The position numbers were made by a program, and so were the translations under genes. DNA of 64,000 bases, from NCBI GenBank assembly GCA_002269645.1, contig NIVC01000362.1, forward strand, positions 62,001 through 126,000, read 5' to 3'. The notes below the pieces were generated by a model, which saw only the letters and a program-made list of their open reading frames with translations, had not been told where the DNA came from and did no database searches. This DNA comes from Macrostomum lignano. Its lineage: Eukaryota. Shown here piece after piece: positions 509 to 62,516 of this stretch. The number at the start of each line of letters is the position of its first letter. The stretch's first letter is position 1.

Positions 509-3500
509 ATGGTGGAACCGGATAAAAGTCCAAGCATTCAGTCGGGCGAATCGAAGCAATTGCAGAGACAGGACTTCGTCATCGATAGCGAACCTGAACG
601 GGAAGTTGAGCAGCAGCCGGTAGAACAGCAGCAACATCGACAAACACCTCATCAGCAGCAACAGCAAGCAGCAGAATCTCAAGAAGCAATTGTTGTCAGC
701 TGGTTTCGCAACACTGATAACATTTTAACCATGCTCACCGTACTAGCTGTAGTGCTTGGCTCAATGATCGGAGCACTGCTCCGTAATTCCAATCTAAGCG
801 ATCGAACCATACTGATAATTGGTTTCCCGGGCGTTCTGATGATGAACATGTTTAAAATGATGACCATTCCGCTGGTGGTTTCGTCTCTGATTGTTGGTGA
901 GATCGATTGAATCAAACTGATTTCATAATTTCATTTGCTCATCCTCGACCTCAATAAACATTCTTCTGTGATTTTTTCGGTGATGATTTTTAACTCAATA
1001 ACCAAGAGACCGGGGCGCCCATTAACAGACAGGGGCGCCCATTAACAGACAGGGGCGTCCATTAACAGACAGGGGCGTCCATCATGAGACAGGGGCGTCC
1101 ATCATGAGACAGGGGCGCCCATCATGAGACAGTGGCGCCCACAATGAGACAGGATCGCCCAACAAGAGACAGGGGCGCCAACTAAGAGACAGGGGCGCCA
1201 ACTAAGAGACAGGGGCGCCAACTAAGAGACAGGGGCGCCAACTAAGAGACAGGGGCGCCCACCAAGAGACCAAATATTGTCAACCCAAAAGTTTGCGGTT
1301 CCTTCAACTAAAATTGCTGTGTACCTGCCGACTTTAGAGCCAGGCTTGACGCGTCGCACTAGAAACAATATTCCATTTCAGGATTACCAAATCTTAATGC
1401 GGGACCATTCGGCAGAATCGGTCTGATCACGGTAGCCTATTACACAGTGACCACATTCTCTGCCACAGCTTTGGGCATCGTATTTGTCATGGTTATTCAA
1501 CCCGGAAGTCCGGTAGAAAAGCTTCAGAGCAACGCTGTCACTGAGATTGGCTCCTACACTGATACTCTGCATGCAATTCTTGACCTGTTGAGGTAATCGC
1601 AATTGTCTAGCTAGCGTATGTTGCTTTATAAATCGATTCAAAATAAATTAGATTGGTTAAAAGTTTAATGCATGGACTACTCAAGTAGGAGGACGGGAAA
1701 TGAGTGAGGATGCTGGTTTTCATCCTCACCTTTGTTATAGCCTTTGTTATAGCTCTATTGATATTCATAAATGCATTTATTAATACATTTATGAATACAC
1801 TTCTTGTGCCTAAAATCATTAAAATGCATGGCAAAGTTCGACTATGGTTTTATGAATCAATTTTATCATCTTTGTTACACATAGCTATTGTTACACAGTG
1901 AGCTAACAATGACAGAATAGATTCATAAAACCAATAAGCCAAGCCGTGCCATTTAATGGTTTTTAGGCACGGGACATGCGCAATTGTACGTAGAATAAAA
2001 ATTAACATAGAATCCTAATTTTCTGAACGAAAAGCTTTATAAATATCAATGGAGCTACCAGGTATAAGAAAGGCACAGCATATCAAAAGATGAGCATTGG
2101 GTCTACCTCCGTAGCTCTTATCTCCGTAGTGTATTTTTCGGCGAAAACCTGATTCTTTTTCAGCGAAGTTTTTTTCAGAAACGTAGTGCCCCGTCCTTCT
2201 ATTTGAGTAGTACTTGGTTCATTATTGCAGAAATTTGGTTCCGGATAATTTAGTGGAAGCCTGCTTCCGGCGGACCGCCACAGTTGTCACAACCAAGAAT
2301 AAAACTGTTTTAAATTCTGACAATTCTACTGGATGGGAAATAAGTCAGACATTTAAGGTCACCACTGTTGATGGATTTAACGCTTTGGGTGAATTTTTGC
2401 ATTCACTGTTTCCGTATCTTATTATACTAGGCTGCAATATGTTGAATATTAATAATATTATTGCACTTTAGGCTTGGTCTCTGTGTCCATATTTATTGGA
2501 ATCGTCATTGGGCGAATGGGCGACAGTGCTTTGCTGTTAGTTCGATTGTTCAACATAATCAACGATGTGGTTATGCTAATGCTCAGAGCCATTATATGGT
2601 GAGTTTATTGAGTATCAGATCTGTGCATCTTTCTGGGTTTATTTTATAGCCGATCTTATATGCTCATAACTAATAATTTAGCATGTACTCAAAATCATAA
2701 AGTGAGAAAATGCTCATAATAATAAAATGAGGATGTGCTCATAATCATAAAATGAGGATGCGCTCATAATCATGAAATGAGGATGTGCTCATAATCATAA
2801 AATGAGGATGTGCACATAATCATAAAATGAGGATGTGCTCATAATCACAAAATGAGGATGTGCTCATAATCATGCAATGAGGATGTGCTCATAATCATAA
2901 AATGAGGACGTGCTCATAATAATAAAATGAGGATGTGCTCATAATCATCAAATGATGATGTGCTCATAATAATAAAATGAGGATGTGCTCATAATCATCA
3001 AATGATGATGTGCTCATAATAATAAAATGAGGATGTGCTCATAATCATCAAATGAGGATGTGCTCATAATCATAAAATGAGGATGTGCTCATAATCATAA
3101 AATGAGGACGTGCTCATAATAATAAAATGAGGATGTGCTCATAATCATCAAATGATGATGTGCTCATAATAATAAAATGAGGATGTGCTCATAATCATCA
3201 AATGATGATGTGCTCATAATAATAAAATGAGGATGTGCTCATAATCATCAAATGAAAATGTGCTCATAATCATAAAATGAGGATGTGCTCATAATCATAA
3301 AATGATGATTTGCTCATAATAATAAAATGAGGATGTGCTCATAATCATCAAATGAGGATGTGCTCATAATCATAAAATGAGGATGTGCTCATAATCATCA
3401 AATGAGGATGTGCTCATAATCATAAAATGAAATGTACTAATAATCATGAAATGAGGATGTGCTCATAATCATAAAATGAGGATGTGCTCATAATCATCAA

Positions 3501-5874
3501 ATGAGGATGTGCTCATAATCATAAAATGAAATGTACTAATAATCATGAAATGAGGATGTGCTCAAAACCCAAAGGCTATATCAAAGTCGCAACTCTTTTG
3601 GTCACTACACCAAAACAGGTACTCGCCAATAGGTATTTTCTTTCTACTAGCGGGTAAAATTCTCGAAGCGAAGAATCTCGAGGCTACGCTGAGGAGTTTG
3701 GGCCTGTACATGGCCACCGTGACAGCCGGTCTGTTGGTTCATGCCTGCGTCACCTTGGCACTGATTTACCTGGCCTTGACCCGCAAGAATCCTGTAGTGT
3801 TCTTTCGCGGCGTGCTCCAAGCCTGGGTCACCGCTCTGGCCACCGCGTCTTCCTCGGCGACGCTGCCAGTCACGTTCAAGTGCTTGGAGGAGAACAACGG
3901 CATCGACAGGACCGTCACTCGGTTTGTTCTGCCAGTCGGAGCCACGCTCAACATGGACGGCACAGCGCTGTACGAGGCTGTGGCCTGCATCTTCATTGCT
4001 CAGGTTAACGGCATCAGTCTGAGCGCTGGTCAAATAACCGTTATTGCGTGAGAGAATCAACTGCAACTAAATGCGCGAAATTTAACCTGGGTGTTGTTGT
4101 GGGAACCCCCTAGGCACAGAGCTGAATTGTACATGCCTGACGATTTAGATTACAAGGGTCAGCAAACTTTTTCAACGTAAGGGCCAGATATAAAATCTAG
4201 CGTATGACTGGAGAGAGGAGAGAGGGAAAATGAGGGGAGAAAGGAGAGAAGAAAGAGGAGAGGGGAGAGAGGAAGGGGAGAGGAGGGAAGGGATATGAGA
4301 GGAGAGAGGTGGGGAGAGGAGCGAGGTGGGGAGAGGAGAGAGGTGGGGAGAGGAGCGAGGTGGGGAGAGGAGAGAGGTGGGGAGAGGAGAGAGGTGGGGA
4401 GAGGAGAGAGGTGGGGAGAGGAGCGAGGTGGGGAGAGGAGAGAGGTGGGGAGAGGAGCGAGGTGGGGAGAGGAGCGAGGTGGGGAGAGGAGCGAGGTGGG
4501 GAGAGGAGCGAGGTGGGGAGAGGAGCGAGGTGGGGAGAGGAGAGAGGTGGGGAGAGGAGAGAGGTGGGGAGAGGAGCGAGGTGGGGAGAGGAGCGAGGTG
4601 GGGAGAGGAGAGAGGTGAGATTAAAGATGAGAGATGAGAGTGTAGATGAGTGGAGAGAGGAGGAGAGGAGACCTGAGAAGAGACACAAACATTGAGCGGG
4701 TCGGATTGCTTTTGTGAAGATTCATGGACCCGAGGGCCGGATAGAGAGGCTTCGTGGGCCGCATGTGGATTTCACCGAAGGCGTTGCGCCACGGAGGTGG
4801 CTGCAGCCCTCCTAGATAATTTTTTATACATTTTAGACTCTCAGCCACTGTTGCCTCTCGCCGTTCGCTAACTGCCACCCGATGCACTATTTAGGTTCAC
4901 GGCAACCCTTGCCGCCACAGGCGCTGCTAGCATCCCCAGTGCCGGCATTGTTACCATGGTGATTGTGCTGTCGTCGGTTGGACTGCCAGTCAACGAAATC
5001 TCGCTTATATTGACAGTGGACTGGCTGCTGTAAGACCGTTAAAGCTATTATAATTTATTTAGTACATGGCAGTAATGGTTAACCATGACAATATATAATA
5101 AGCCATACTAAAATAGTTCTATTATATCGAGATAATATTATAAACGCCTGTCAGAAACAACTATTACCTGTAAGACACCTGTTATATACCTGTTCAGGAG
5201 CTTTACACCCCTGTTAAAGCCCTTTTCGACACTTGTTGGATCCTCTTTTAGACTCCCTTTTAGATCCGTGTTAGACACCTATTTAACAACCTGAAAGAGC
5301 ACCTGTTAGACACCCTGTTGGACCACCTGTTAGACCACCTGTTAGAAGCCCTGTTAGACCACCTGTTAGACCACCTGTTAGACCACCTGTTAGACCACCT
5401 GTTAGACCATCTGTTAGACCACCTGTTAGACCACCTGTTAGACCACCTGTTAGACCACCTGTTAGAAGCCCTGTTAGACCACCTGTTAGACCACCTGTTA
5501 GACCACCTGTTAGACCACCTGTTAGACCACCTGTTAGACCACCTTTTAGACCACCTGTTAGACCACCTGTTAGACCACCTGTTAGACACCTGCATGACCA
5601 CCTGTATGACCCAGCGATCACCTTCATATCCAGCGACCGTCTGCGCACATCAGTGAATGTGCTCGGTGACGCATTCGGAGCAGGCATTGTGGATCACCTG
5701 TGCAAAACCCGTGCAGCTGAACAGTCAGCGGCTGTCACTGCAGACGCTACAGACCAATTACAGACAGGTAAGAGGCAATAGTTTGTTTTTAAAACAGCGC
5801 AGATTCGATAAAGTTTCAAACACCCTTTTATTGCAGACTCTGAACTCCTCGATTTTAATGATGAAGAGGCTTAG
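509..5874 (+). CDS. SLC1A/EAAT glutamate-aspartate transporter, paralog A (canonical, EAAT2/GLT-1-like); 8 coding exons
   Basis: Exons 509-896, 1382-1592, 2231-2388, 2472-2598, 3619-4047, 4895-5029, 5634-5767, 5837-5874; all GT-AG with consistent phases. Motifs: [31 protein letters not shown] (HP1), [10 protein letters not shown] (TM7), GAASIPSAG (HP2), [21 protein letters not shown] (TM8). AATAAA at 6041. Start codon (509) and last short exon are less certain. Confidence 0.93.
1004..1270. repeat. Minisatellite, 20-nt unit (GAGACAGGGGCGCCCA..)
   Basis: About 13 copies in EAAT-A intron 1. Confidence 0.9.
2660..3565. repeat. Minisatellite, 25-nt unit GTGCTCATAATCATAAAATGAGGAT
   Basis: About 35 copies in EAAT-A intron 4. 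Confidence 0.95.
4155..4830 (+). mobile_element. hAT-like MITE containing a GA-rich tandem tract (17-nt unit GAGGTGGGGAGAGGAGM)
   Basis: Left end CAAGGGTCAGCAAACTTTTT..AAGGGCCAGATA; right arm GAGAAGAGACACAAAC..GAGC.GG..GGATTGCT...GAGGGCCG is shared with 53915-54017. Right boundary is approximate. Confidence 0.55.
5290..5600. repeat. Minisatellite, 12-nt unit GTTAGACCACCT
   Basis: About 25 copies in EAAT-A intron 6. Confidence 0.95.
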
Positions 5875-6874: not shown

Positions 6875-9800
6875 ATGAAACGAAAAACAGTTAGTTTTAA
6901 CATTTCCGAATTAACTTCAAAACTTCGATTGGAGACAAGAAAAACGCCGGGATTGGACACTCCAAAGACATCTGGATTAGAGACTCAGACGACGCCTGGA
7001 TTAGAGACTCCAAAGACACCTGGATTAGAGACTCCAAAGACACCTGGATTAGAGACTCCAAAGACACCAGGATTAGAGACCCAAACGACACTTGGATTAG
7101 AGACCCAAACGACACTTGGATTAGAGACCCAAACGACACCCAAAACATTATTTGTACCTAAGCAAGATCGGCGATTCGGCGACAACCCAACGAGACGAAA
7201 ATCCAGACGGCGACAATCGCGGTGTAGAAAAATATTCAACAGATGCGCGACTTGCTGCTGTCAGCATAAGGTCAGCATTTTGACAGCCCTGACTCTGCTT
7301 TCAATGCTTCTGGGTTTAGCGTTCGGTTGGCTGGTTCGAGCTGCTCACCCAAGTCCACTGGCCGTTCTGCTGATCGGCTACCCAGGCGAACTGTTCATGC
7401 GGATGCTCAAGGTGCTGGTCCTGCCGCTGGTTGTGTCCTCCTTGGTCGCAGGTTAGACTCAAAGAACATCTGTTTTATTTTCTGATGCTGGCCAATAGTT
7501 TTCTCAATAGATCCTCAGACACAATATCTAGATCCTGAGACACAATATCGAGATCCTGAGACACAATATCGACATCCTCAGACACAATATCTAGATCCTG
7601 AGACACAATATCGAGATCCTGAGACACAATATCTAGATCCACGGACACAATGCCTAGATCCTCAGACACAATATCAAGATCCTCAGACACAATATCAAGA
7701 TCCTCAGACACAATATCCAGATCCTCAGACACAATATCGAGCTCCTGAGACACAATATCCAGATCCCTAGATACAATATCCAGATCCTCAGACACAATAT
7801 CGAGATCCTGAGACATAATATCCAGATCCACGGACACAATGCCTAGATCGTCAGGCACAGTATCCAGATCCTCAGCCACTTAACTTCCAGATTATCAAAT
7901 ACATCATCAAGTATTTAAAAGTTTATGCTTATAAGTTCGTAAGTAATAGGTGCATGCAGCTATAATTACTAAATCACCAGGATTGTGCAGTCTAAACACC
8001 AACAACTCAAGCAAAGTAGGCGTGTTCACGCTGGTATACAGCTTCTTGACAAACTGGTCAGCTGTCCTGATTGGCATCCTGTTTGTCATGCTAATTAAGC
8101 CGGGAAATTCCCAAATTAAGCAACAATTGGACATTGGTGAATTTGGAATTCACGGTGGCTCTAATAGGACAATTTATCATATTTTTGACTTGTTTCGGTA
8201 AGGAATTTTTCCTGTGTAATATTCTTGTAATCACTTTTGGGCTGGTTCTAAATTACCGATTGCTTATGGGTGTGTGGGAGTGTCTATGGCCAGGATGTAG
8301 TGTGCGTGGGAGTGTCTATGGCCAGAATTTAGTGCGTGTGGGAGTGTCTATGGTCAGAAGGTAGTGTGCGTGGGAGTGTCTATGGCCAGAATTTAGTGCG
8401 TGTGGGAGTGTCTATGGTCAGAAGGTAGTGTGCGTGGGAGTGTCTATGGTCAGAAGGTAGTGCGTGGGAGTGTCTATGGCCAGAATTTAGTGCGTGTGGG
8501 AGTGTCTATGGTCAGGATGTAGTGTGCGAGAGAGTGTCTATGGTCAGGCCATAGTGTGTGTGTGGGAGTGTTTATGGCCAGGCCATAGTGTATGTGGGAG
8601 TGTCTATGGCCAGGATGTAGTGTGCGTGGGAGTGTCTATGGCCAGGCCATAGTGTATGCGGGAGTGTCTATGGCCAGAATGTAGTGTATGTGGGAGTGTC
8701 TATGGCCAGAATGTAGTGTATGCGGGAGTGTCTATGGCCAGAATGTAGTGTATGCGGGAGTGTCTTTGGCCAGAATGTAGTGTATGTGGGAGTGTCTATG
8801 GCCAGAGTGTAGTGCATGTGGGAGTGTCTATGGCCAGAATGTAGTGTACGCGGGGGTGTCTATGGCCAGAATGTAGTGTATGTGGGAGTGTCTATGGCCA
8901 GGCCACATTGTGTGAGGGAGTGTCTATGGCCAAGTTAGCTCGTATAGGTACTATGTGAAACTGGCTATGGTTAAGCTACAGACTGTGTCAGCCTTTTTAA
9001 AGCGATATCGTAACCCCATTTTAGTAATTTGTTCCCGGACAACATTATGGTTGCCACCTTTAATCTAGTAGAAACAAAATTGGTTAGCGAAAGTGACAAT
9101 TCTTCTGAAGCTCGAAATAATTCTATTACTTCTATTACTCGAAAGTTCAACAGCGTCTTCGCTCTGGACACAATGCTTGTTGGTAAAAGTGAAACTAATG
9201 TGTTGGGTGAGTGGTTCCAGTGGGAAAATATGACAATGAAAATGTATTAATATTCATAAATTTACTAATTTTCTATTCAAGTTCCGGAATCTTTTAGGCA
9301 TGCTGTGCATTTCGATAATATTTGCTCTAGTTGTGAAACAAATGGGCGACAGGGCGCAGCCAGTGATTGACCTGTTCAATATTCTTAACAATGTGGTGAT
9401 GCGCTTCGTTAAAGTTATTATGTGGCAAGTGATTTGAAGTGCATGAAGGGAAGGGAGTGAAGGGAAGCGAGTGAAGTGAAGGGAGTGAAGGGAAGGGAGT
9501 GAATGGAAGCGAGTGAAGTGAAGGGAGTGAAGGGAAGGGAGTGAAGTGAAGGGAGTGAAGGGAAGGGAGTGAAAGGAGGGAGTGAAGGGAAAGGAGTGAA
9601 TGGAGGGGTGAAGTGAAGGGAATTAAGGGAGGGGTGAAGGGAAGGGAGTGAAGTGATGAGTGAAAGGAAGGGAGTGAAGTTAAGAGAGTGAAAGGAAGGG
9701 AGTGAAGTTAAGAGAGTGAAGGAAGGGAGTGAAGTTAAGAGAGTGAAGGAAGGGAGTGAAGTTAAGAGAGTGAAAGGAAGGGAGTGAAGTTAAGAGAGTG

Positions 9801-12594
9801 AAAGGAAGGGAGTGAAGTTAAGAGAGTGAAGGAAGGGAGTGAAATAAGTGAGTGCAAGGATGGGAGTGGAGGGAGGGAGTGAAGGGAAGGAAGTGAAGTT
9901 AAGGGAGTGAAGGGAAGGGAGTAAAAGAAGTGAGTGAAAGGATGGGAGTGGAGGGAGGGAGTGAAGGGAAGGGAGTGAAGTTAAGGGAGTGAAGGGAAGG
10001 GAGTGAAAGAAGTGAGTGAAAGGATGGGAGTGGAGGGAGGGAGTGAAGGGAAGGGAGTGACAGAAGAGAGTGACGCTAAACATCGAGCGTTGCTTTATTT
10101 TTCTTCAAAAAAAATTTTGATCAGGTGCTCGCCAATAGGAATTTTCTCCCTAATTGGGAAGCAAGCTATTCAAATGGACGATCCAGGTGTCACACTCCGC
10201 AGCCTGGGTCTGTACTGTGCCACTGTATCAGTTGGGCTCTTCACGCACTCCTGCCTAGTGCAGGCTGTGTCCTACTTTGTCCTGGCTAGAAGCAACCCAT
10301 TCAAGTTCTTTCGCGGCATCTTCCAAGCCTATATAACCGCTCTGGGCACGGCTTCGTCTGCCGCCACCCTTCCGATCACCTCCCGCTGTCTGGAGGAGAA
10401 CAACGGCATTGAAAGGAAAATATCCCGGTTCGTGCTGCCCATCGGAGTCACTGTGAACATGAACGGAACTGCGCTGTATCTGGCGGCAGCGACGATATTC
10501 ATCGCTCAGGTTAACGAGGTGCCCCTTGGCGCGCTTGAAATCGTAGCCGTCAGGTTCGTTGGCGATTGGGGGGCCCTGTTTGAGGCGCAGATAAGTAGAA
10601 TAACTAGATGGGCCACTCAGCACATTTGCGTGTAAGCTACTTTCAGTTCAGTAGTAAGTTAAACTGAAGCATTTTAATGTAATCTTAAAGCCACGGCTAA
10701 TTTTATTGGCTCTTACCTTCAGCTTAAACCCTCAACCGCGCCTTTCCATTCCATTCCACCCACTCCCGCCCCGCCCCAATTTTTATTGCCTTTCTCTCGG
10801 AATTCCACCCTAAAGCGGCCATGTACATTTCAGTTGGACTGGCCAATGTACATTATTGCTGAACCAATTAGCAAGCTTTTTGAGCTTCTGAACTTATCAA
10901 AGGCATTTTTAGCTGCCTTTATTTTTATAAAATGAATTCCTCTTTATTCCTCTTTGTTATGAATTCCTCTTTGCTGGTGAACTGAAAATGCTGTTTTACT
11001 AAGTATACATGCCTGAGTTGCCTATCTAGTTATTCTAGTATCTGTGGTTTGCGGTGGGTGGGGATGGGGGTTAGGCGGAAAAAGTTTCCGTGGAGGAAGG
11101 GAAAGTAGGAAAGGAGCTGGGGAAGGACTGAAAAATAAGTAAGCTGTCGAGAGGAAAATGGGAGAAAGTGTGATAAAAAGGGAGAAAAATTGAAAAAAGG
11201 GAAAAGGGGAGAAAGGGGGAGAAAAGGGGAGAAAGGGGGAGAAAAGGGGAGCAAAGGGGAGAAAAGGGGAGAAAAGGGGAGAAAAGGGGAGAATAAAAAG
11301 GAGAAAGGGGGAGAAAATGGGAGAAAAGGGGAGAAAAGGGGAGAAAAGGGGAGAAAAGGGGAGAAAATGGGAGAAAAGGGGAGAAAATGGGAGGAAAGGG
11401 GAGAAAAGGGGAGAAAAGGGGAGAAAAGGGGAGAAAAGGGGAGAAAAGGGGAGAAAAAGGAGAAAGGGGGAGAAAATGGGAGAAAAGGGGAGAAAAGAGA
11501 AGAAAAGGGGAGAAAAGGGGAGAAAATTGGAGAAAAAGGAGAAACGGGGAGAAAAAGGGAGAAAAGGGAGAAAAGGGAGAAAAGGGGAGAAAAGGGGAGA
11601 AAAGGGGAGAAAAGGGGAGAAAAAGGAGAAAGGGGGAGAAACTGGGAGAAAAGGGGAGAAAATGGGAGAAAAGGGGAGAAAAGGGGAGAAAAGGGGAGAA
11701 AAGGGGAGAAAAAGGAGAAAGGGGGAGAAAAGGGGAGAAAAGGGGAGAAAAGGGGAGAAAAGGGGAGAAAAAGGAGAAACGGGGAGAAAAAGGGAGAAAA
11801 GGGAGAAAAGGGAGAAAAGGGAGAAAAGGGAGAAAAATGGAGAAAATGGGAGAAAAGGGGAGAAGAGGGAACAGACAGAAGGGGAAAAAGAATAATAGAA
11901 GGAATTACCTGAAGAGGATGTGATGAATGAAGAAATGCTTCAATTTTAATCTTAATCACCTGCTTCAGCCTGATGGCTACCCTGGCAGCAATTGGCACAG
12001 CCGGGTTGCCTGGCGGAGCTCTGGCCACTATTTCGATGGTGGTGTCAGCTCTCGGCCTCCCAATTGACGATACCACGCTGATAGCAAAGGTCGACTGGCT
12101 GCTGTAAGCTGCCTGATTGTGCAGTCTGCTTCAAAATTTGACGCTTTTAGTACACAGCTGCTAACGCTCGTAACCCTGACTGACACTAGCTATTGACATT
12201 GGTGTTAGAGCTACTGACACTACAGAGCTACTGACACTACAGAGCTACAGACATTATAGAGCTACAGACATTATAGAGCTACAGACATTATAGAGCTACT
12301 GACACTACAGAGCTACTGACACTACAGAGCTACTGACACTACAGAGCTACTGACACTACAGAGCTACTGACACTACAGAGCTACTGACACTACAGAGCTA
12401 CTGACACTACAGAGCTACTGAGTATTGTAAGAGTTTTTACTGCAGGTACAATAGGAATTCCTTAAATTTCAAAACTGACACTTTGCAGCGATCATCAGCG
12501 CACCGCGGTCAACATTCTGGGTGACGGATTCTGCGCCGGCATTCTGAACAACATGAACCGCAGAGCGGCTGCGCAGGCGTCGCCAAGGTCGTGA
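6875..12594 (+). CDS. SLC1A/EAAT-family transporter, paralog B (divergent ion-coupling residues); 7 coding exons
   Basis: Exons 6875-7451, 7981-8197, 9025-9206, 9298-9424 (GC donor), 10125-10553, 11969-12103, 12489-12594. Intron positions and phases match paralog A; exons 4, 5 and 6 have identical lengths (127, 429, 135 nt). Motifs: GYPGELFMRMLKVLVLPLVVSSL, NLFPDNI, TASSAATLP, NMNGTALYLA, IGTAGLPGG, DWLLDHQRTAVNILGD. Confidence 0.9.
7505..7875. repeat. Minisatellite, 21-nt unit AGATCCTCAGACACAATATCN
   Basis: About 17 copies in EAAT-B intron 1. Confidence 0.95.
8268..8930. repeat. Minisatellite, about 32-nt unit GGGAGTGTCTATGGCCAGAATGTAGTGTATGY
   Basis: About 20 copies in EAAT-B intron 2. 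Confidence 0.95.
9445..10075. repeat. Purine-rich degenerate repeat (GAAGGGAAGGGAGTGAAGT)
   Basis: Fills EAAT-B intron 4. Confidence 0.9.
11155..11880. repeat. Purine-rich repeat (GGGGAGAAAA)n
   Basis: In EAAT-B intron 5; source of spurious GEK/FSP ORFs. Confidence 0.95.
12205..12420. repeat. Minisatellite, 17-nt unit CTGACACTACAGAGCTA
   Basis: About 12 copies in EAAT-B intron 6. Confidence 0.9.
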
Positions 12595-14558: not shown

Positions 14559-34881
<20,323 letters not shown>

Positions 34882-39378: not shown

Positions 39379-41706
<2,328 letters not shown>

Positions 41707-41839
41707 CCTGAGCAGATGCCGCTCGGTGGAGTGAAAACTGCACGTGGCTATGATTTAGCCAGCCAGCGGGTTACAACTTGCGTCTGTGTGTTAAAGTACA
41801 CTTTGCAAAAATTTTCGGGCACAAAAGGATAAGAACAAA

Positions 41840-42122
41840 GGCAGACAGACAGACAAACAAACAGATAGACAGACACAGACAGACAGACAGACAGACACAC
41901 AGACATACAGACAGACAGACAGACAGGCAGACAGACAGACAGACACACAGACAGACAGACAGACACACAGACAGACAGACAAACAGACACACAGACAGAC
42001 AGACAGACAGACACACAGACATACAGACAGACAGGCAGACACACAGACAGACAGACAGACAGACATACAGACAGACAGACATACAGACAGACAGACAGAC
42101 AGGCAGACAGACAGACAGACAC

Positions 42123-42153
<31 letters not shown>

Positions 42154-42425
42154 CACAGACAAACAGACACACAGACAGACAGACAGACAGACACACAGAC
42201 ATACAGACAGACAGGCAGACACACAGACAGACAGACAGACAGACATACAGACAGACAGACAGACAGACAGACACACAGACAGACAGACAAACAGACACAC
42301 AGACAGACAGACAGACAGATACACAGACATACAGACAGACAGACAGACAGGCAGACACACAGACAGACAGACAGACAGACAGACACACAGACAGACAGAC
42401 AGACAGACAGACAGGCAGACAGACA
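41840..42425. repeat. Microsatellite (ACAG)n
   Basis: Downstream of the STI1-domain gene stop. Confidence 0.95.
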
Positions 42426-43064
42426 TTACAGAACACTTAGGACACAAAGACAGGCGAATACAAGCAGTGACACACAGACAGGTGCAAAGGTTAAACACCA
42501 AGTAAGTTAGCTATGATTAATACTATGTCATATTAATACTCGTAAAATAATAATGTTGAACATTACTGAAGAGGTTTTTAAAGAATTATATAAGCTGTTT
42601 TTTTAGCCAAGCAATGTGCCTGATGAACAGTTATCAAGTTCATCTCATTTGTGAATTAATACATAATCATAAGCCCACTGCATGCCTACATATTGTTAGA
42701 TGCATAATCAATGCTTTCCATCGTAATATATAAATAAAAGCATCGGTTTTCTTAATGTGCTACTTAGTTTCAAAGTTTTTTTCTCACTAATTGATATGCA
42801 ATTTGTCATGCAATTGAAGTTGCTTTAGTTGTTACTAAATGCCAATTTATTTTGCATTAAAATGCTATGTTAAAAGAGAGAAAATTATATATATATATAT
42901 ATATATAAATTCGTCAGTTAATGGACTGAATAGATGCGGTAAGCGCAGTGCTGTACAAATAAATTTTACGAAAATAATTTGCCGATAATAAATTTAAAAG
43001 TACTACAAAACATTAATTACTACGCTAGTATCGGTTAACAGATGGGACTGGCACATAATTTCGA

Positions 43065-49487: not shown

Positions 49488-59775
<10,288 letters not shown>

Positions 59776-62030: not shown

Positions 62031-62516
62031 CTAAGCCACCAATACACCGCCCCCAGATCCGCTGTCTCCATCGGGCTTGTTGCTGCCGCTGCTGCCACCG
62101 CTACCGCCTGCGGCAGCCGCATCGCTAGGCCGTTCGCCAGCCAGCCGGATTCCGTGCTTCTCTTTGAATTCGTTCAATTCGCGGCCCTTGTCTTCTAGGC
62201 GCTGTTTCATCTGTTCAACAAGAGCCAGCATCTGTTCCCGATTGGTAGACAGAGTTGGCAGGACTTCCCCGGCTGTGCGTTCAACTAACACGCTGCCAAC
62301 CATGCGATAGCACTTCCTATCTGGTTGGACTTTCTCTAACACGTCAATAACTAGGCCGAATTCGCGGGCCTCCATCTCCATCTGGTTGATTCGCATACCA
62401 ATTTGACGCTGCTCTTCGCGCAGCACGTTGAACTGATTGACAGCCTCTTGTACGTTTTTTTTGCTAGGCGCGGCACCGCTGCTGCCGCTACTGTTGCTAA
62501 CCGCAGATGTTGACAT
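62031..62516 (-). CDS. PFDN2: Prefoldin subunit 2, intronless CDS
   Basis: 161-aa ORF with FNVLREEQRQI...EFGLVIDVLEKVQPDRKCYRMVGSVLVERTAGEVLPTL...KGRELNEFKEKHGIR, the PFDN2 signature. Confidence 0.96.
   Translation of the reverse strand: MSTSAVSNSSGSSGAAPSKKNVQEAVNQFNVLREEQRQIGMRINQMEMEAREFGLVIDVLEKVQPDRKCYRMVGSVLVERTAGEVLPTLSTNREQMLALVEQMKQRLEDKGRELNEFKEKHGIRLAGERPSDAAAAGGSGGSSGSNKPDGDSGSGGGVLVA

What the first reader, a model, noticed from the sequence alone, without database searches (positions are those of the whole stretch)
6875..12594. EAAT paralog B has rewired Na+/H+/K+ coupling residues but keeps the acidic-substrate ligands
Seen in sequence, A versus B: TM7 [10 protein letters not shown] versus NMNGTALYLA (AAC at 10462-10464, CTG at 10480-10482); TM8 DRLRT versus DHQRT (12490-12504); TM3 YYTVTT versus YSFLTN (8037-8054); HP1 SSS versus SSA; HP2 GAASIPSAG versus GTAGLPGGA. 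Established: the NMDGT Asp (GltPh D312, EAAC1 D367) and the TM3 Y/T/T residues form the Na3 site, and D367N cripples cycling. The YE glutamate (EAAC1 E373, GLT-1 E404) mediates proton and K+ coupling, and the Arg after the TM8 Asp (EAAC1 R445) controls cation-substrate coupling. B retains the substrate ligands (GltPh D394/R397/T398/N401 equivalents), the NxxGD Asp and the TM2 SS linked to the anion conductance, and has an intact ORF and splice structure. Inference: these co-varying changes point to a functional SLC1 subtype with reduced ion stoichiometry, exchange-only activity, or a glutamate/aspartate-gated anion channel or sensor role, rather than a decaying copy.
Basis: partly seen in the sequence, partly recalled or inferred. 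Interest (0 to 1): 0.8.

Follow-up and report, generated by a model that had tools for sequence, protein, structure and literature searches.

The report
Flatworm glutamate-transporter paralog with altered coupling residues
One of two tandem glutamate-transporter genes in the flatworm Macrostomum lignano has naturally lost three residues that couple transport to sodium, protons and potassium while keeping its substrate site, so it may be a natural uncoupled or exchange-type transporter, or a copy beginning to decay.

Summary
The window is Macrostomum lignano. Paralog B is identical to GenBank PAA84759.1 (Mlig009731.g1), a 7-exon, 590-aa SLC1/EAAT gene from a transcript-derived annotation. B has N481, L487 and H558 where 119 of 120 closest homologs have D, E and R. 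It also has N217 at the second TM3 Na3 threonine. All substrate ligands and the Na1 aspartate are kept.

Two listed differences are not rewiring. B's HP1 "ASSA" is the same as human EAAT2. Its HP2 tip resembles prokaryotic homologs.

B was constrained over the long term: A–B dN/dS is about 0.28, it evolves only 1.6 times faster than A, and neutral simulations never keep the ORF. Recent evidence is weaker. Three genomic copies differ by 6 nonsynonymous and 1 synonymous change, one copy carries a frameshift, and no ortholog was found.

Published mutants (EAAT3 D368N, E374Q; GLT-1 E404D) are exchange-only. EAAT1 R477H turns the anion leak cation-selective at alkaline pH, which argues against the anion-channel reading.

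Most likely B is a K+/H+-independent exchanger or low-stoichiometry carrier. Decay remains a serious rival. It is a new variant of a known kind, of moderate interest.

The parts
6875..12594 (+). Paralog B, whole coding span (Mlig009731.g1, PAA84759.1), 590 aa in 7 exons
   Evidence: Gene model. The protein is 100% identical to P0121/PAA84759.1. It matches Pfam PF00375 and human EAAT2 at E=6e-116.
6875..7451 (+). B exon 1: disordered N-terminal tail, polybasic/Cys-rich stretch, TM1 and TM2 (includes VVSSLV at 7430-7447)
   Evidence: The AF2 model has pLDDT below 50 for residues 1-104.
6950..7140 (+). In-frame 24-nt coding minisatellite (PGLETPKT-like units). It has 8 units here, and 12 and 21 units in the other two genomic copies
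   Evidence: TRF; copy numbers.
7981..8197 (+). B exon 2: TM3, containing YSFLTN (8037-8054). T216 (8049-8051) is kept. N217 (8052-8054) replaces the second Na3 Thr/Ser
   Evidence: Mapping table from PMC3958442.
9025..9206 (+). B exon 3: TM4 loop region
9298..9424 (+). B exon 4, followed by a GC-AG intron (donor GCAAGT at 9425-9430)
   Evidence: The GC donor is shared by all three copies. A has GT at the same junction.
10125..10553 (+). B exon 5: TM5/6, HP1 (ASSAAT at 10351-10368) and TM7 with NMNGTALYLA (10456-10485)
10462..10464 (+). Codon AAC = Asn481 at the NMDGT Asp position (GltPh D312, EAAT3 D368; Na3 site)
   Evidence: GltPh D312N abolishes Na3 binding. EAAT3 D368N is exchange-only.
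10480..10482 (+). Codon CTG = Leu487 at the proton/K+-coupling Glu position (EAAT3 E374, GLT-1 E404)
   Evidence: E. coli DctA also has Leu at this position.
11969..12103 (+). B exon 6: HP2 with GTAGLPGGA (11994-12020) and the start of TM8 (VDWLL)
   Evidence: The HP2 tip resembles the prokaryotic SIGTAGVPGAG.
12489..12594 (+). B exon 7: TM8 DHQRT (12490-12504), NILGD (12511-12525) and the stop codon
12493..12495 (+). Codon CAT = His558 at the EAAT3 R445 / EAAT1 R477 position
   Evidence: Functional data for EAAT1 R477H.
509..5781 (+). Paralog A, 531 aa in 7 exons (509-896, 1382-1592, 2231-2388, 2472-2598, 3619-4047, 4895-5029, 5634-5781). It has a canonical NMDGTALYE / DRLRT / YYTVTT
   Evidence: It has no gene call in the GenBank annotation at either fetched syntenic locus (L001, L002), and the exact protein is not in the collection.

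Best explanation
B is a transcribed, lineage-specific, fast-evolving member of the SLC1/EAAT family in Macrostomum lignano. It is the last gene of a head-to-tail cluster: canonical EAAT Mlig001421, then A, then B.

B keeps the elevator fold. It keeps the acidic-amino-acid binding residues D557, R560, T561, N564 and T483. It also keeps D553, the Na1 aspartate D568, and the Na2 elements (M480 and HP2 backbone).

B has lost four things. The only charged ligand of the Na3 site is gone (D to N481). The neighbouring TM3 ligand is changed (T/S to N217). The glutamate that carries the proton and enables K+ counter-transport is gone (E to L487). The TM8 arginine that sets coupling and anion selectivity is gone (R to H558).

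B therefore cannot run the canonical 3 Na+/1 H+/1 K+ cycle. The most likely mechanism, which is inferred and not shown, is Na+-dependent but K+- and E374-type-H+-independent binding and translocation of glutamate or aspartate. That would make B an obligate exchanger or a low-stoichiometry, weakly concentrative carrier. Any uncoupled conductance would be pH-tunable through His558 and probably not anion-selective at seawater pH.

Shown here: the sequence, the gene structure, identity to a transcript-based annotation, the fold, long-term purifying selection, and the rarity of the substitutions. Inferred: the transport mode.
For: - Identity and transcript basis: B equals PAA84759.1. The GenBank annotation of this assembly is built only from RNA-seq and transcriptome assemblies (PMC5730564).
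- Fold: the AF2 core has pLDDT of 80-97. TM7 is broken at the NM residues and both hairpins are present. Foldseek gives a TM-score of 0.91-0.93 to outward-facing EAAT3, EAAT1 and ASCT2.
- Rarity: 119 of 120 closest homologs have D, E and R at these positions.
- Long-term constraint: A-B pN is 0.37 and pS is 0.68, giving dN/dS of about 0.28. The Tajima relative-rate test gives 93 B-unique against 58 A-unique changes, so B is 1.6 times faster, not many times faster. In neutral simulations 0 of 200 runs kept an ORF at 70% identity. All splice sites are conserved in the three copies.
- Mutant precedents: GltPh D312N abolishes Na3 binding and the NMDGT switch (PMC9171649). EAAT3 D368N, EAAT3 E374Q and GLT-1 E404D give no net transport, retain exchange and lose the K+ interaction (PMC3958442 Table 1; PMC2151618). 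E374 hydrogen-bonds HP2b or pairs with R447 to implement H+/K+ coupling (PMC10160106). B's HP2 tip is changed together with it (PSAG to PGGA).
- Natural precedents: prokaryotic SLC1 clades lost their Na+-site residues after becoming uncoupled (PMC12668577). DctA has Leu at the E374 position. D-to-N variants (NMNGTALYE) occur in at least three other unidentified sequence lineages from metagenomes or read assemblies.
Against: - No functional or expression-level data were found for this gene.
- No ortholog was found in any other species, so constraint on the specific N, L and H residues cannot be tested.
- Among the three recent genomic copies the changes are 6 nonsynonymous to 1 synonymous, against about 9 to 9 for A (Fisher p=0.18). 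One copy (g3) has a 1-nt insertion that frameshifts TM2.
- B has the longest branch in the tree and differs at 28% of highly conserved columns, so the key changes could be part of general drift.
- Single-site mutant phenotypes from mammalian EAATs may not transfer to a protein about 55-60% diverged from human EAATs.
Confidence: 0.5

Rival explanations
1. B is a duplicate that was functional for a long time but is now under relaxed selection. It would be an expressed but functionally dead or dying transporter. The coupling-residue losses would then be damage, not adaptation.
For: - The three copies differ by 6 nonsynonymous and 1 synonymous change.
- There is a frameshift in copy g3.
- B has the longest branch, and 45 of 162 conserved columns are changed.
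- No orthologs were found.
- D368N, E374Q and E404D each abolish net transport in mammalian EAATs.
- The genome is a recent polyploid with several canonical EAAT copies, so redundancy is high.
Against: - Two copies keep a full ORF and all splice sites.
- The long-term dN/dS is about 0.28, and B is only 1.6 times faster than A.
- All seven side-chain substrate ligands and the Na1 Asp are intact.
- The E-to-L change needs two nucleotide changes and is fixed in all copies.
- The counts among copies are too small to be significant (p=0.18), and the g3 indel could be an assembly error.
Confidence: 0.3
2. B is mainly a substrate-gated channel or sensor rather than a carrier. Glutamate or aspartate binding would open the uncoupled pore, and net transport would be negligible. 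This resembles EAAT4/5, but with pH-dependent and possibly cation selectivity because of His558.
For: - The TM2 Ser-Ser motif is kept, and the substrate site is intact.
- Substitutions that slow cycling favour channel-like behaviour.
- EAAT1 R477H slows turnover and gives a large uncoupled cation conductance at pH 8.5.
Against: - The Arg needed for anion selectivity is missing, and no Arg is present at the alternative HP1 position (A444).
- GltPh D312N severely impairs HP2 opening and the NMDGT switch, which may also impair channel gating.
- No sequence feature specific to channel-dominant EAATs was identified.
Confidence: 0.12
3. B still performs essentially canonical Na+-driven concentrative uptake. 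Compensating changes would restore a third Na+ site or an alternative proton carrier, for example N217 together with N481, or His558.
For: - Asn side chains can coordinate Na+.
- The TM3 T-to-N change is adjacent to the D-to-N change.
- D-to-N variants recur in other lineages.
- EAAT1 R477H keeps Na+ dependence.
Against: - No new acidic residue appears near the site.
- D312N and D368N abolish Na3 binding and cycling.
- Leu cannot carry a proton or pair with R560.
Confidence: 0.06

Closest known systems
Vertebrate EAAT2/GLT-1 (SLC1A2) and canonical flatworm EAATs (M. lignano Mlig001421, Mlig005305)
   Same: Same Pfam SDF domain and the same fold. Full-length alignment at 42-50% identity. Same HP1 'ASSA', the same substrate ligands D/R/T/N, the same Na1 Asp and the same TM2 SS. 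The exon structure is shared with neighbouring paralog A.
   Different: B has N for D398, L for E404, H for R475 and N for T128 (GLT-1 numbering). Its HP2 tip is GTAGLPGGA instead of GAASIPSAG. It has a long repeat-containing N-terminal tail.
Engineered EAAT mutants: EAAT3 D368N and E374Q, GLT-1 E404D, EAAT1 R477H, GltPh D312N
   Same: The same positions are altered. D to N and R to H are the identical substitutions.
   Different: B is a natural protein that carries all of these changes together, against a background of about 50% sequence divergence. The position-374 residue is Leu, not Gln or Asp. The phenotype is unknown.
Prokaryotic uncoupled 'intermediate' clade and ancestral uncoupled aspartate transporter (PDB 9bgy, 9bgz, 9bh0; Reddy et al. 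2025)
   Same: This is a natural loss of Na+-site residues in an SLC1 homolog with the aspartate site retained. The HP2 motif 'IGTAG.PG' is similar.
   Different: Different residues are lost. The bacterial signature is T92 to hydrophobic, M311L and D405N, and B keeps T216, M480 and D568. B is a metazoan EAAT-type protein about 28-30% identical to those structures.
ASCT1/2 (SLC1A4/5) obligate exchangers
   Same: They lack the proton/K+-coupling Glu and work without K+ counter-transport. This is the transport mode predicted for B.
   Different: ASCTs have Gln rather than Leu at that position and keep the NMDG Asp (fragments with NMDGAA(L/I)FQ). From established knowledge of ASCT sequences, not tested here, ASCTs keep the TM8 Arg at the R445 position and have Cys/Thr instead of the substrate Arg. 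B keeps R560, so it should bind acidic substrates.
E. coli DctA (H+-coupled C4-dicarboxylate carrier)
   Same: It has Leu at the EAAT E374 position (NLDGTSIYL).
   Different: DctA keeps the NxDGT Asp. It has Ser instead of the alpha-amino-binding Asp and Asn instead of the Na1 Asp. It is only distantly related.

Membership tests
SLC1 / DAACS (Pfam PF00375, sodium:dicarboxylate symporter family) | Significant full-length match to the SDF domain and to solved SLC1 proteins | tested here: met
   PF00375 is listed for the protein. Human EAAT2 matches at E=6e-116 over residues 128-580.
SLC1 / DAACS | Elevator fold with 8 TM helices, two re-entrant hairpins and an unwound TM7 | tested here: met
   The AF2 core is high-confidence, with the helix break at N479-M480, HP1 at 426-460 and HP2 at 504-538. 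Foldseek gives TMt 0.91-0.93 to EAAT3, EAAT1 and ASCT2.
SLC1 / DAACS | Homotrimeric assembly | not testable with these tools
   Only a monomer model was made.
EAAT subfamily (3 Na+/1 H+/1 K+-coupled acidic amino-acid transporters) | Acidic-substrate ligands: TM8 D444, R447, T448, N451 and TM7 T370 (EAAT3 numbering) | tested here: met
   D557, R560, T561, N564 and T483 are present.
EAAT subfamily | NMDGT aspartate (D368) forming the Na3 site | tested here: not met
   Asn481, codon AAC at 10462-10464.
EAAT subfamily | TM3 Na3 ligands T101/T102 | tested here: inconclusive
   T216 is kept. The second position is Asn217.
EAAT subfamily | Proton/K+-coupling glutamate (E374) in the YE motif | tested here: not met
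   Leu487, codon CTG at 10480-10482.
EAAT subfamily | TM8 arginine R445 (EAAT1 R477) | tested here: not met
   His558 is present. The alternative HP1 position is Ala444.
EAAT subfamily | Na1 aspartate (D455) and D440 | tested here: met
   D568 and D553 are present.
EAAT subfamily | Measured 3 Na+ : 1 H+ : 1 K+ stoichiometry | not testable with these tools
   This requires electrophysiology or flux assays.
ASCT-type neutral amino-acid exchangers | Cys/Thr at the substrate Arg position, NMDGA motif, Gln at the E374 position | tested here: not met
   B has R560, NMNGT and L487.
Bacterial H+-coupled GltP/GltT/DctA type | Signature T/S92 to hydrophobic, M311L, D405N (PMC12668577) | tested here: not met
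   B keeps T216, M480 and D568.
Pseudogene | Premature stop codons, frameshifts or broken splice sites | tested here: inconclusive
   The window copy (g1) and g2 are intact. Copy g3 has a 1-nt insertion in exon 1. Whether that insertion is real or an assembly error is unknown.

The most novel reading that the evidence does not exclude
B is a naturally re-engineered metazoan glutamate/aspartate carrier. The Na3 ion would be replaced by an Asn217-Asn481 hydrogen-bonded bridge, which pre-forms the high-affinity state. The proton-sensing role would have moved from the TM7 glutamate to His558 in TM8. The result would be a 2 Na+ (+/- 1 H+), K+-independent transporter or exchanger whose affinity and leak selectivity (anion versus cation) are switched by pH. 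That would be an animal counterpart of the uncoupled prokaryotic intermediate clade. It would also be a natural test of which residues are necessary for EAAT coupling.
Probability: 0.1. Interest if true: 0.8.

Novelty: new variant of a known kind. Interest (0 to 1): 0.45.

Why it matters
How EAATs couple glutamate uptake to three Na+, one H+ and one K+ is still being worked out, mostly from point mutants that simply break the cycle.

A natural, expressed animal EAAT homolog that has lost the Na3 aspartate, the proton/K+ glutamate and the TM8 arginine, yet kept its substrate site and reading frame, would show what a viable lower-coupling solution looks like in a eukaryotic scaffold. It would parallel the recently described route by which bacteria lost Na+ coupling.

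M. lignano is transgenic- and RNAi-tractable, so the physiological role could be tested. If B turns out to be a decaying copy, the result is ordinary.

Tried and rejected
1. dN/dS among the three genomic copies of B. Exons 4-7 are identical, but the neighbouring introns are too (0.15-0.7% divergence). The test has no power there. Only 7 variable codons exist.
2. Ortholog search. The full-length search and the exon-5 search found nothing closer than 50-60% identity outside M. lignano. No cross-species dN/dS was possible.
The tool returned only short fragments. This gave a few NMNGTALYE fragments of unknown organism but no quantitative census.
4. Expression data. The gene identifier is absent from the searchable literature and from the supplements of three M. 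lignano transcriptome papers.
5. Looking for A as an annotated protein. The exact A sequences are not in the collection. A appears only in a chimeric A+B UniProt model, A0A1I8ITF1, which skips B exons 3-4 and retains intron sequence. I rejected that model as evidence for a fusion transcript.
6. HP1 'SSS versus SSA' as rewiring. Rejected, because B's ASSA equals human EAAT2 and the canonical M. lignano EAATs.
7. Sequencing error at the key codons. Rejected, because three assembled loci agree.
8. A compensating acidic residue near Na3. None was found among B's changes at conserved columns.
Full report
**What is there**

The window is genomic DNA of the free-living flatworm Macrostomum lignano. 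The protein encoded by the finding's interval is 100% identical over 590 residues to GenBank PAA84759.1, 'hypothetical protein BOX15_Mlig009731g1'.

I rebuilt both gene models by hand.
- Paralog A has 7 exons between 509 and 5781 and encodes 531 aa.
- Paralog B has 7 exons between 6875 and 12594 and encodes 590 aa.
- The two genes lie head to tail on the + strand. They share intron phases, and exons 4, 5 and 6 have identical lengths (127, 429 and 135 nt).
- All B introns are GT-AG except intron 4, which has a GC donor in strong consensus (TG|GCAAGT). A has GT at the same junction.
- Every intron of both genes contains its own minisatellite.

**Genomic context**

The public assembly GCA_002269645.1 holds two further copies of the A-B pair on contig NIVC01000405.1. 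These are locus L001 (copy g2) and locus L002 (copy g3). This fits the known redundancy of this recently polyploid genome (PMC5730564).

On that contig the order is canonical EAAT gene Mlig001421, then A, then B, all on one strand. B is therefore the last member of a three-gene SLC1 cluster.

The GenBank annotation of this assembly was built exclusively from RNA-seq and transcriptome assemblies. The annotated 590-aa, 7-exon B model is therefore itself evidence of a spliced transcript.

A has no gene call at either fetched locus, and its exact sequence is not in the protein collection. It appears only inside a chimeric UniProt model, A0A1I8ITF1, which fuses A to part of B.

**How unusual the residues are**

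Among the 120 best homologs, 119 have NMDGTALYE and DR[I/F/M/L/V]RT. Only B has NMNGTALYL and DHQRT.

Ungapped alignment to human EAAT2, combined with the published correspondence table (PMC3958442), gives the following mapping.

| B residue | Equivalent position | Status |
|---|---|---|
| N481 | GltPh D312 / EAAT3 D368 | changed |
| L487 | EAAT3 E374 / GLT-1 E404 | changed |
| H558 | EAAT3 R445 / EAAT1 R477 | changed |
| T216 | GltPh T92 | kept |
| N217 | GltPh S93 | changed |
| S213 | GltPh Y89 (backbone ligand) | side chain differs |

Retained residues are N479, M480, T483, Y486, D553, D557, R560, T561, N564 and D568.

- B's HP1 'ASSA' equals human EAAT2 and the canonical M. lignano EAATs.
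- B's HP2 'AIGTAGLPGGA' is far from the EAAT consensus. It is close to the prokaryotic 'SIGTAGVPGAG' seen in the ancestral uncoupled aspartate transporter 9bgz.

B is divergent overall. It differs at 45 of 162 columns that are at least 95% conserved, against 23 for A. By my classification, 4 of 8 coupling side chains are changed and 0 of 7 substrate side chains are changed. The one-sided p is about 0.05, so the pattern is suggestive but not compelling.

**Relationship of A and B**

In the conserved core, B is 45% identical to A and 50% identical to canonical M. lignano EAATs. A is 56-58% identical to those canonical EAATs. The canonical EAATs are about 65% identical to other flatworm EAATs.

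A neighbour-joining tree groups A with B in 84% of bootstraps. It groups both with the canonical M. lignano genes in 69%. B has the longest branch. Long-branch attraction is a caveat here. A and B are therefore old, divergent tandem duplicates, not a recent pair.

**Is B under selection?**

Long term, the answer is yes.
- On 516 aligned codons, A against B gives pN 0.37 and pS 0.68. The dN/dS ratio is about 0.28, with dS near saturation.
- Tajima's relative-rate test with Mlig001421 as outgroup gives 93 B-unique against 58 A-unique changes (p=0.004). B is 1.6 times faster than A, not the several-fold expected for a long-dead gene.
- In 200 neutral simulations, none kept an open frame by the time identity fell to 70%. 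The mean was 6.4 stop codons.
- All splice sites, including the GC donor, are shared by the three copies.

Short term, the evidence is weak and points the other way.
- Outside the N-terminal repeat, the three B copies differ at 7 codons, 6 nonsynonymous and 1 synonymous. All 7 lie in exons 1-3.
- The A copies differ by roughly equal numbers of each, with pairwise pN/pS of 0.2-0.4. Fisher p is 0.18.
- Exons 4-7 of B are identical in all copies, but so are the adjacent introns, so this says nothing about constraint.
- Copy g3 carries a 1-nt insertion that frameshifts TM2. It is annotated only from an internal Met. This could be real or an assembly error.
- No ortholog was found outside M. lignano in either the full-length or the exon-level search.

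**Fold**

An AlphaFold2 model of copy g2 has a confident core, with pLDDT mostly 80-97 from residue 130 onward. TM7 is broken at N479-M480, both hairpins are present, and the N-terminal 104 residues are disordered. The model superposes on outward-facing EAAT3, EAAT1 and ASCT2 with target-normalised TM-scores of 0.91-0.93.

**What the substitutions are expected to do**

This section rests on published work and is inference for B.
- GltPh D312N abolishes Na+ binding at Na3 and the NMDGT conformational switch, and it severely impairs HP2 opening (PMC9171649).
- In the compilation of PMC3958442, EAAT3 D368N shows no net transport, retained exchange and no K+ interaction. GLT-1 E404D and EAAT3 E374Q are likewise locked in exchange. 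PMC2151618 identifies E373 as the protonation site and D367 as a ligand for Na+ on the empty carrier.
- Cryo-EM of EAAT3 shows that protonated E374 hydrogen-bonds the G415 carbonyl of HP2b and that deprotonated E374 pairs with R447. Either a proton or K+ is therefore needed to close the gate. Archaeal homologs use Gln at this position and need no K+ (PMC10160106). Leu can do neither. B also has Ala528 at the G415 position and a remodelled HP2 tip.
- The exact Arg-to-His change has been made in human EAAT1. R477H keeps Na+ dependence. It slows turnover at low pH. Its uncoupled conductance switches from anion- to purely cation-selective when the His is deprotonated at pH 8.5 (PMC4924932).

Natural precedents also exist.
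- Prokaryotic SLC1 lineages became uncoupled first and then lost Na+-site residues, but at other positions (T92, M311, D405), which B keeps (PMC12668577).
- E. coli DctA has Leu at the E374 position.
- Fragments with NMNGTALYE (D to N only, with E and R kept where visible) occur in at least three other unidentified sequence lineages from metagenomes or read assemblies.
- The string NMNGT does not occur in any SLC1 paper in the searchable library.

**Conclusion**

B cannot operate the canonical EAAT cycle. The best-supported reading is an expressed, long-constrained, lineage-specific SLC1 variant that binds acidic amino acids. It would work as a K+/H+-independent exchanger or low-stoichiometry carrier, possibly with a pH-tunable leak (confidence about 0.5).

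A copy now sliding into decay is a serious alternative (about 0.3). A channel or sensor role (about 0.1) and preserved canonical coupling (about 0.05) are less likely.

This is a new variant of a known family, not a new kind of system. Its value is as a natural experiment on ion coupling, and it needs expression data and orthologs before it can carry weight.

Noticed in passing
window 6950-7140 (B exon 1); L001 10001-10673; L002 8455-9344: An in-frame 24-nt coding minisatellite (PGLETPKT/PGLETQTT units) in B's cytoplasmic N-terminal tail varies between genomic copies: 8, 12 and 21 units. The GenBank protein for copy g2 (590 aa) does not match the 622 aa encoded by its own locus.
   Followed up: partly
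window 9425-9430: B intron 4 uses a GC-AG donor (GCAAGT), where paralog A has GT (2599). The GC donor is conserved in all three copies.
   Followed up: yes
window 897-5633 and 7452-12488: Every one of the 12 introns of A and B carries its own distinct minisatellite array. Periods are 10-32 nt and arrays reach about 900 bp. Many are strongly purine- or G-skewed, which produces the large GC-skew swings in the composition profile.
   Followed up: partly
L002 about 9330 (copy g3 of B, exon 1): A 1-nt insertion (CTGC-CGCTGG to CTGCGCGCTGG) frameshifts TM2 in the third genomic copy. It is not in a homopolymer. Whether it is real or an assembly error is unknown.
   Followed up: partly
window 509-5781: Paralog A, which has canonical coupling residues, has no gene call in the transcript-based GenBank annotation at either syntenic locus. 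It exists in UniProt only as part of a chimeric A+B model (A0A1I8ITF1) that skips B exons 3-4 and reads into an intron.
   Followed up: partly
L006 10001-22264, upstream of the window's start: A canonical EAAT gene (Mlig001421.g4) lies about 3.4 kb upstream of A on the same strand. This makes a three-gene SLC1 tandem cluster with progressively more divergent members. M. lignano makes polycistronic, trans-spliced pre-mRNAs, so co-transcription is conceivable.
   Followed up: no
L003 172-793 (Logan SRR20314591); proteins P0201, P0222, P0310, P0313, P0314: Other uncharacterised SLC1 fragments of unknown organism carry NMNGTALYE, with Asp to Asn only. L003, which is AT-rich (31% GC), keeps DRMRT. 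Loss of the Na3 aspartate therefore recurs in nature.
   Followed up: partly
window 20414-22933 (+): A long ORF corresponds to a SID-1 RNA-channel-family gene (Pfam PF13965 at the syntenic position in L001). Its C-terminal reading runs into an (AL)n repeat.
   Followed up: no
window 62031-62516 (-): A 161-aa ORF looks like a small coiled-coil chaperone subunit of prefoldin-beta type. This is by eye only.
   Followed up: no
window 30680-31900, 40070-40560, 41750-42500, 32258-34018, 52524-54023: Large arrays of short tandem repeats give long spurious ORFs in several frames, for example (CLSV)n / (DRQT)n and Ser/Leu/Pro-rich units.
   Followed up: no
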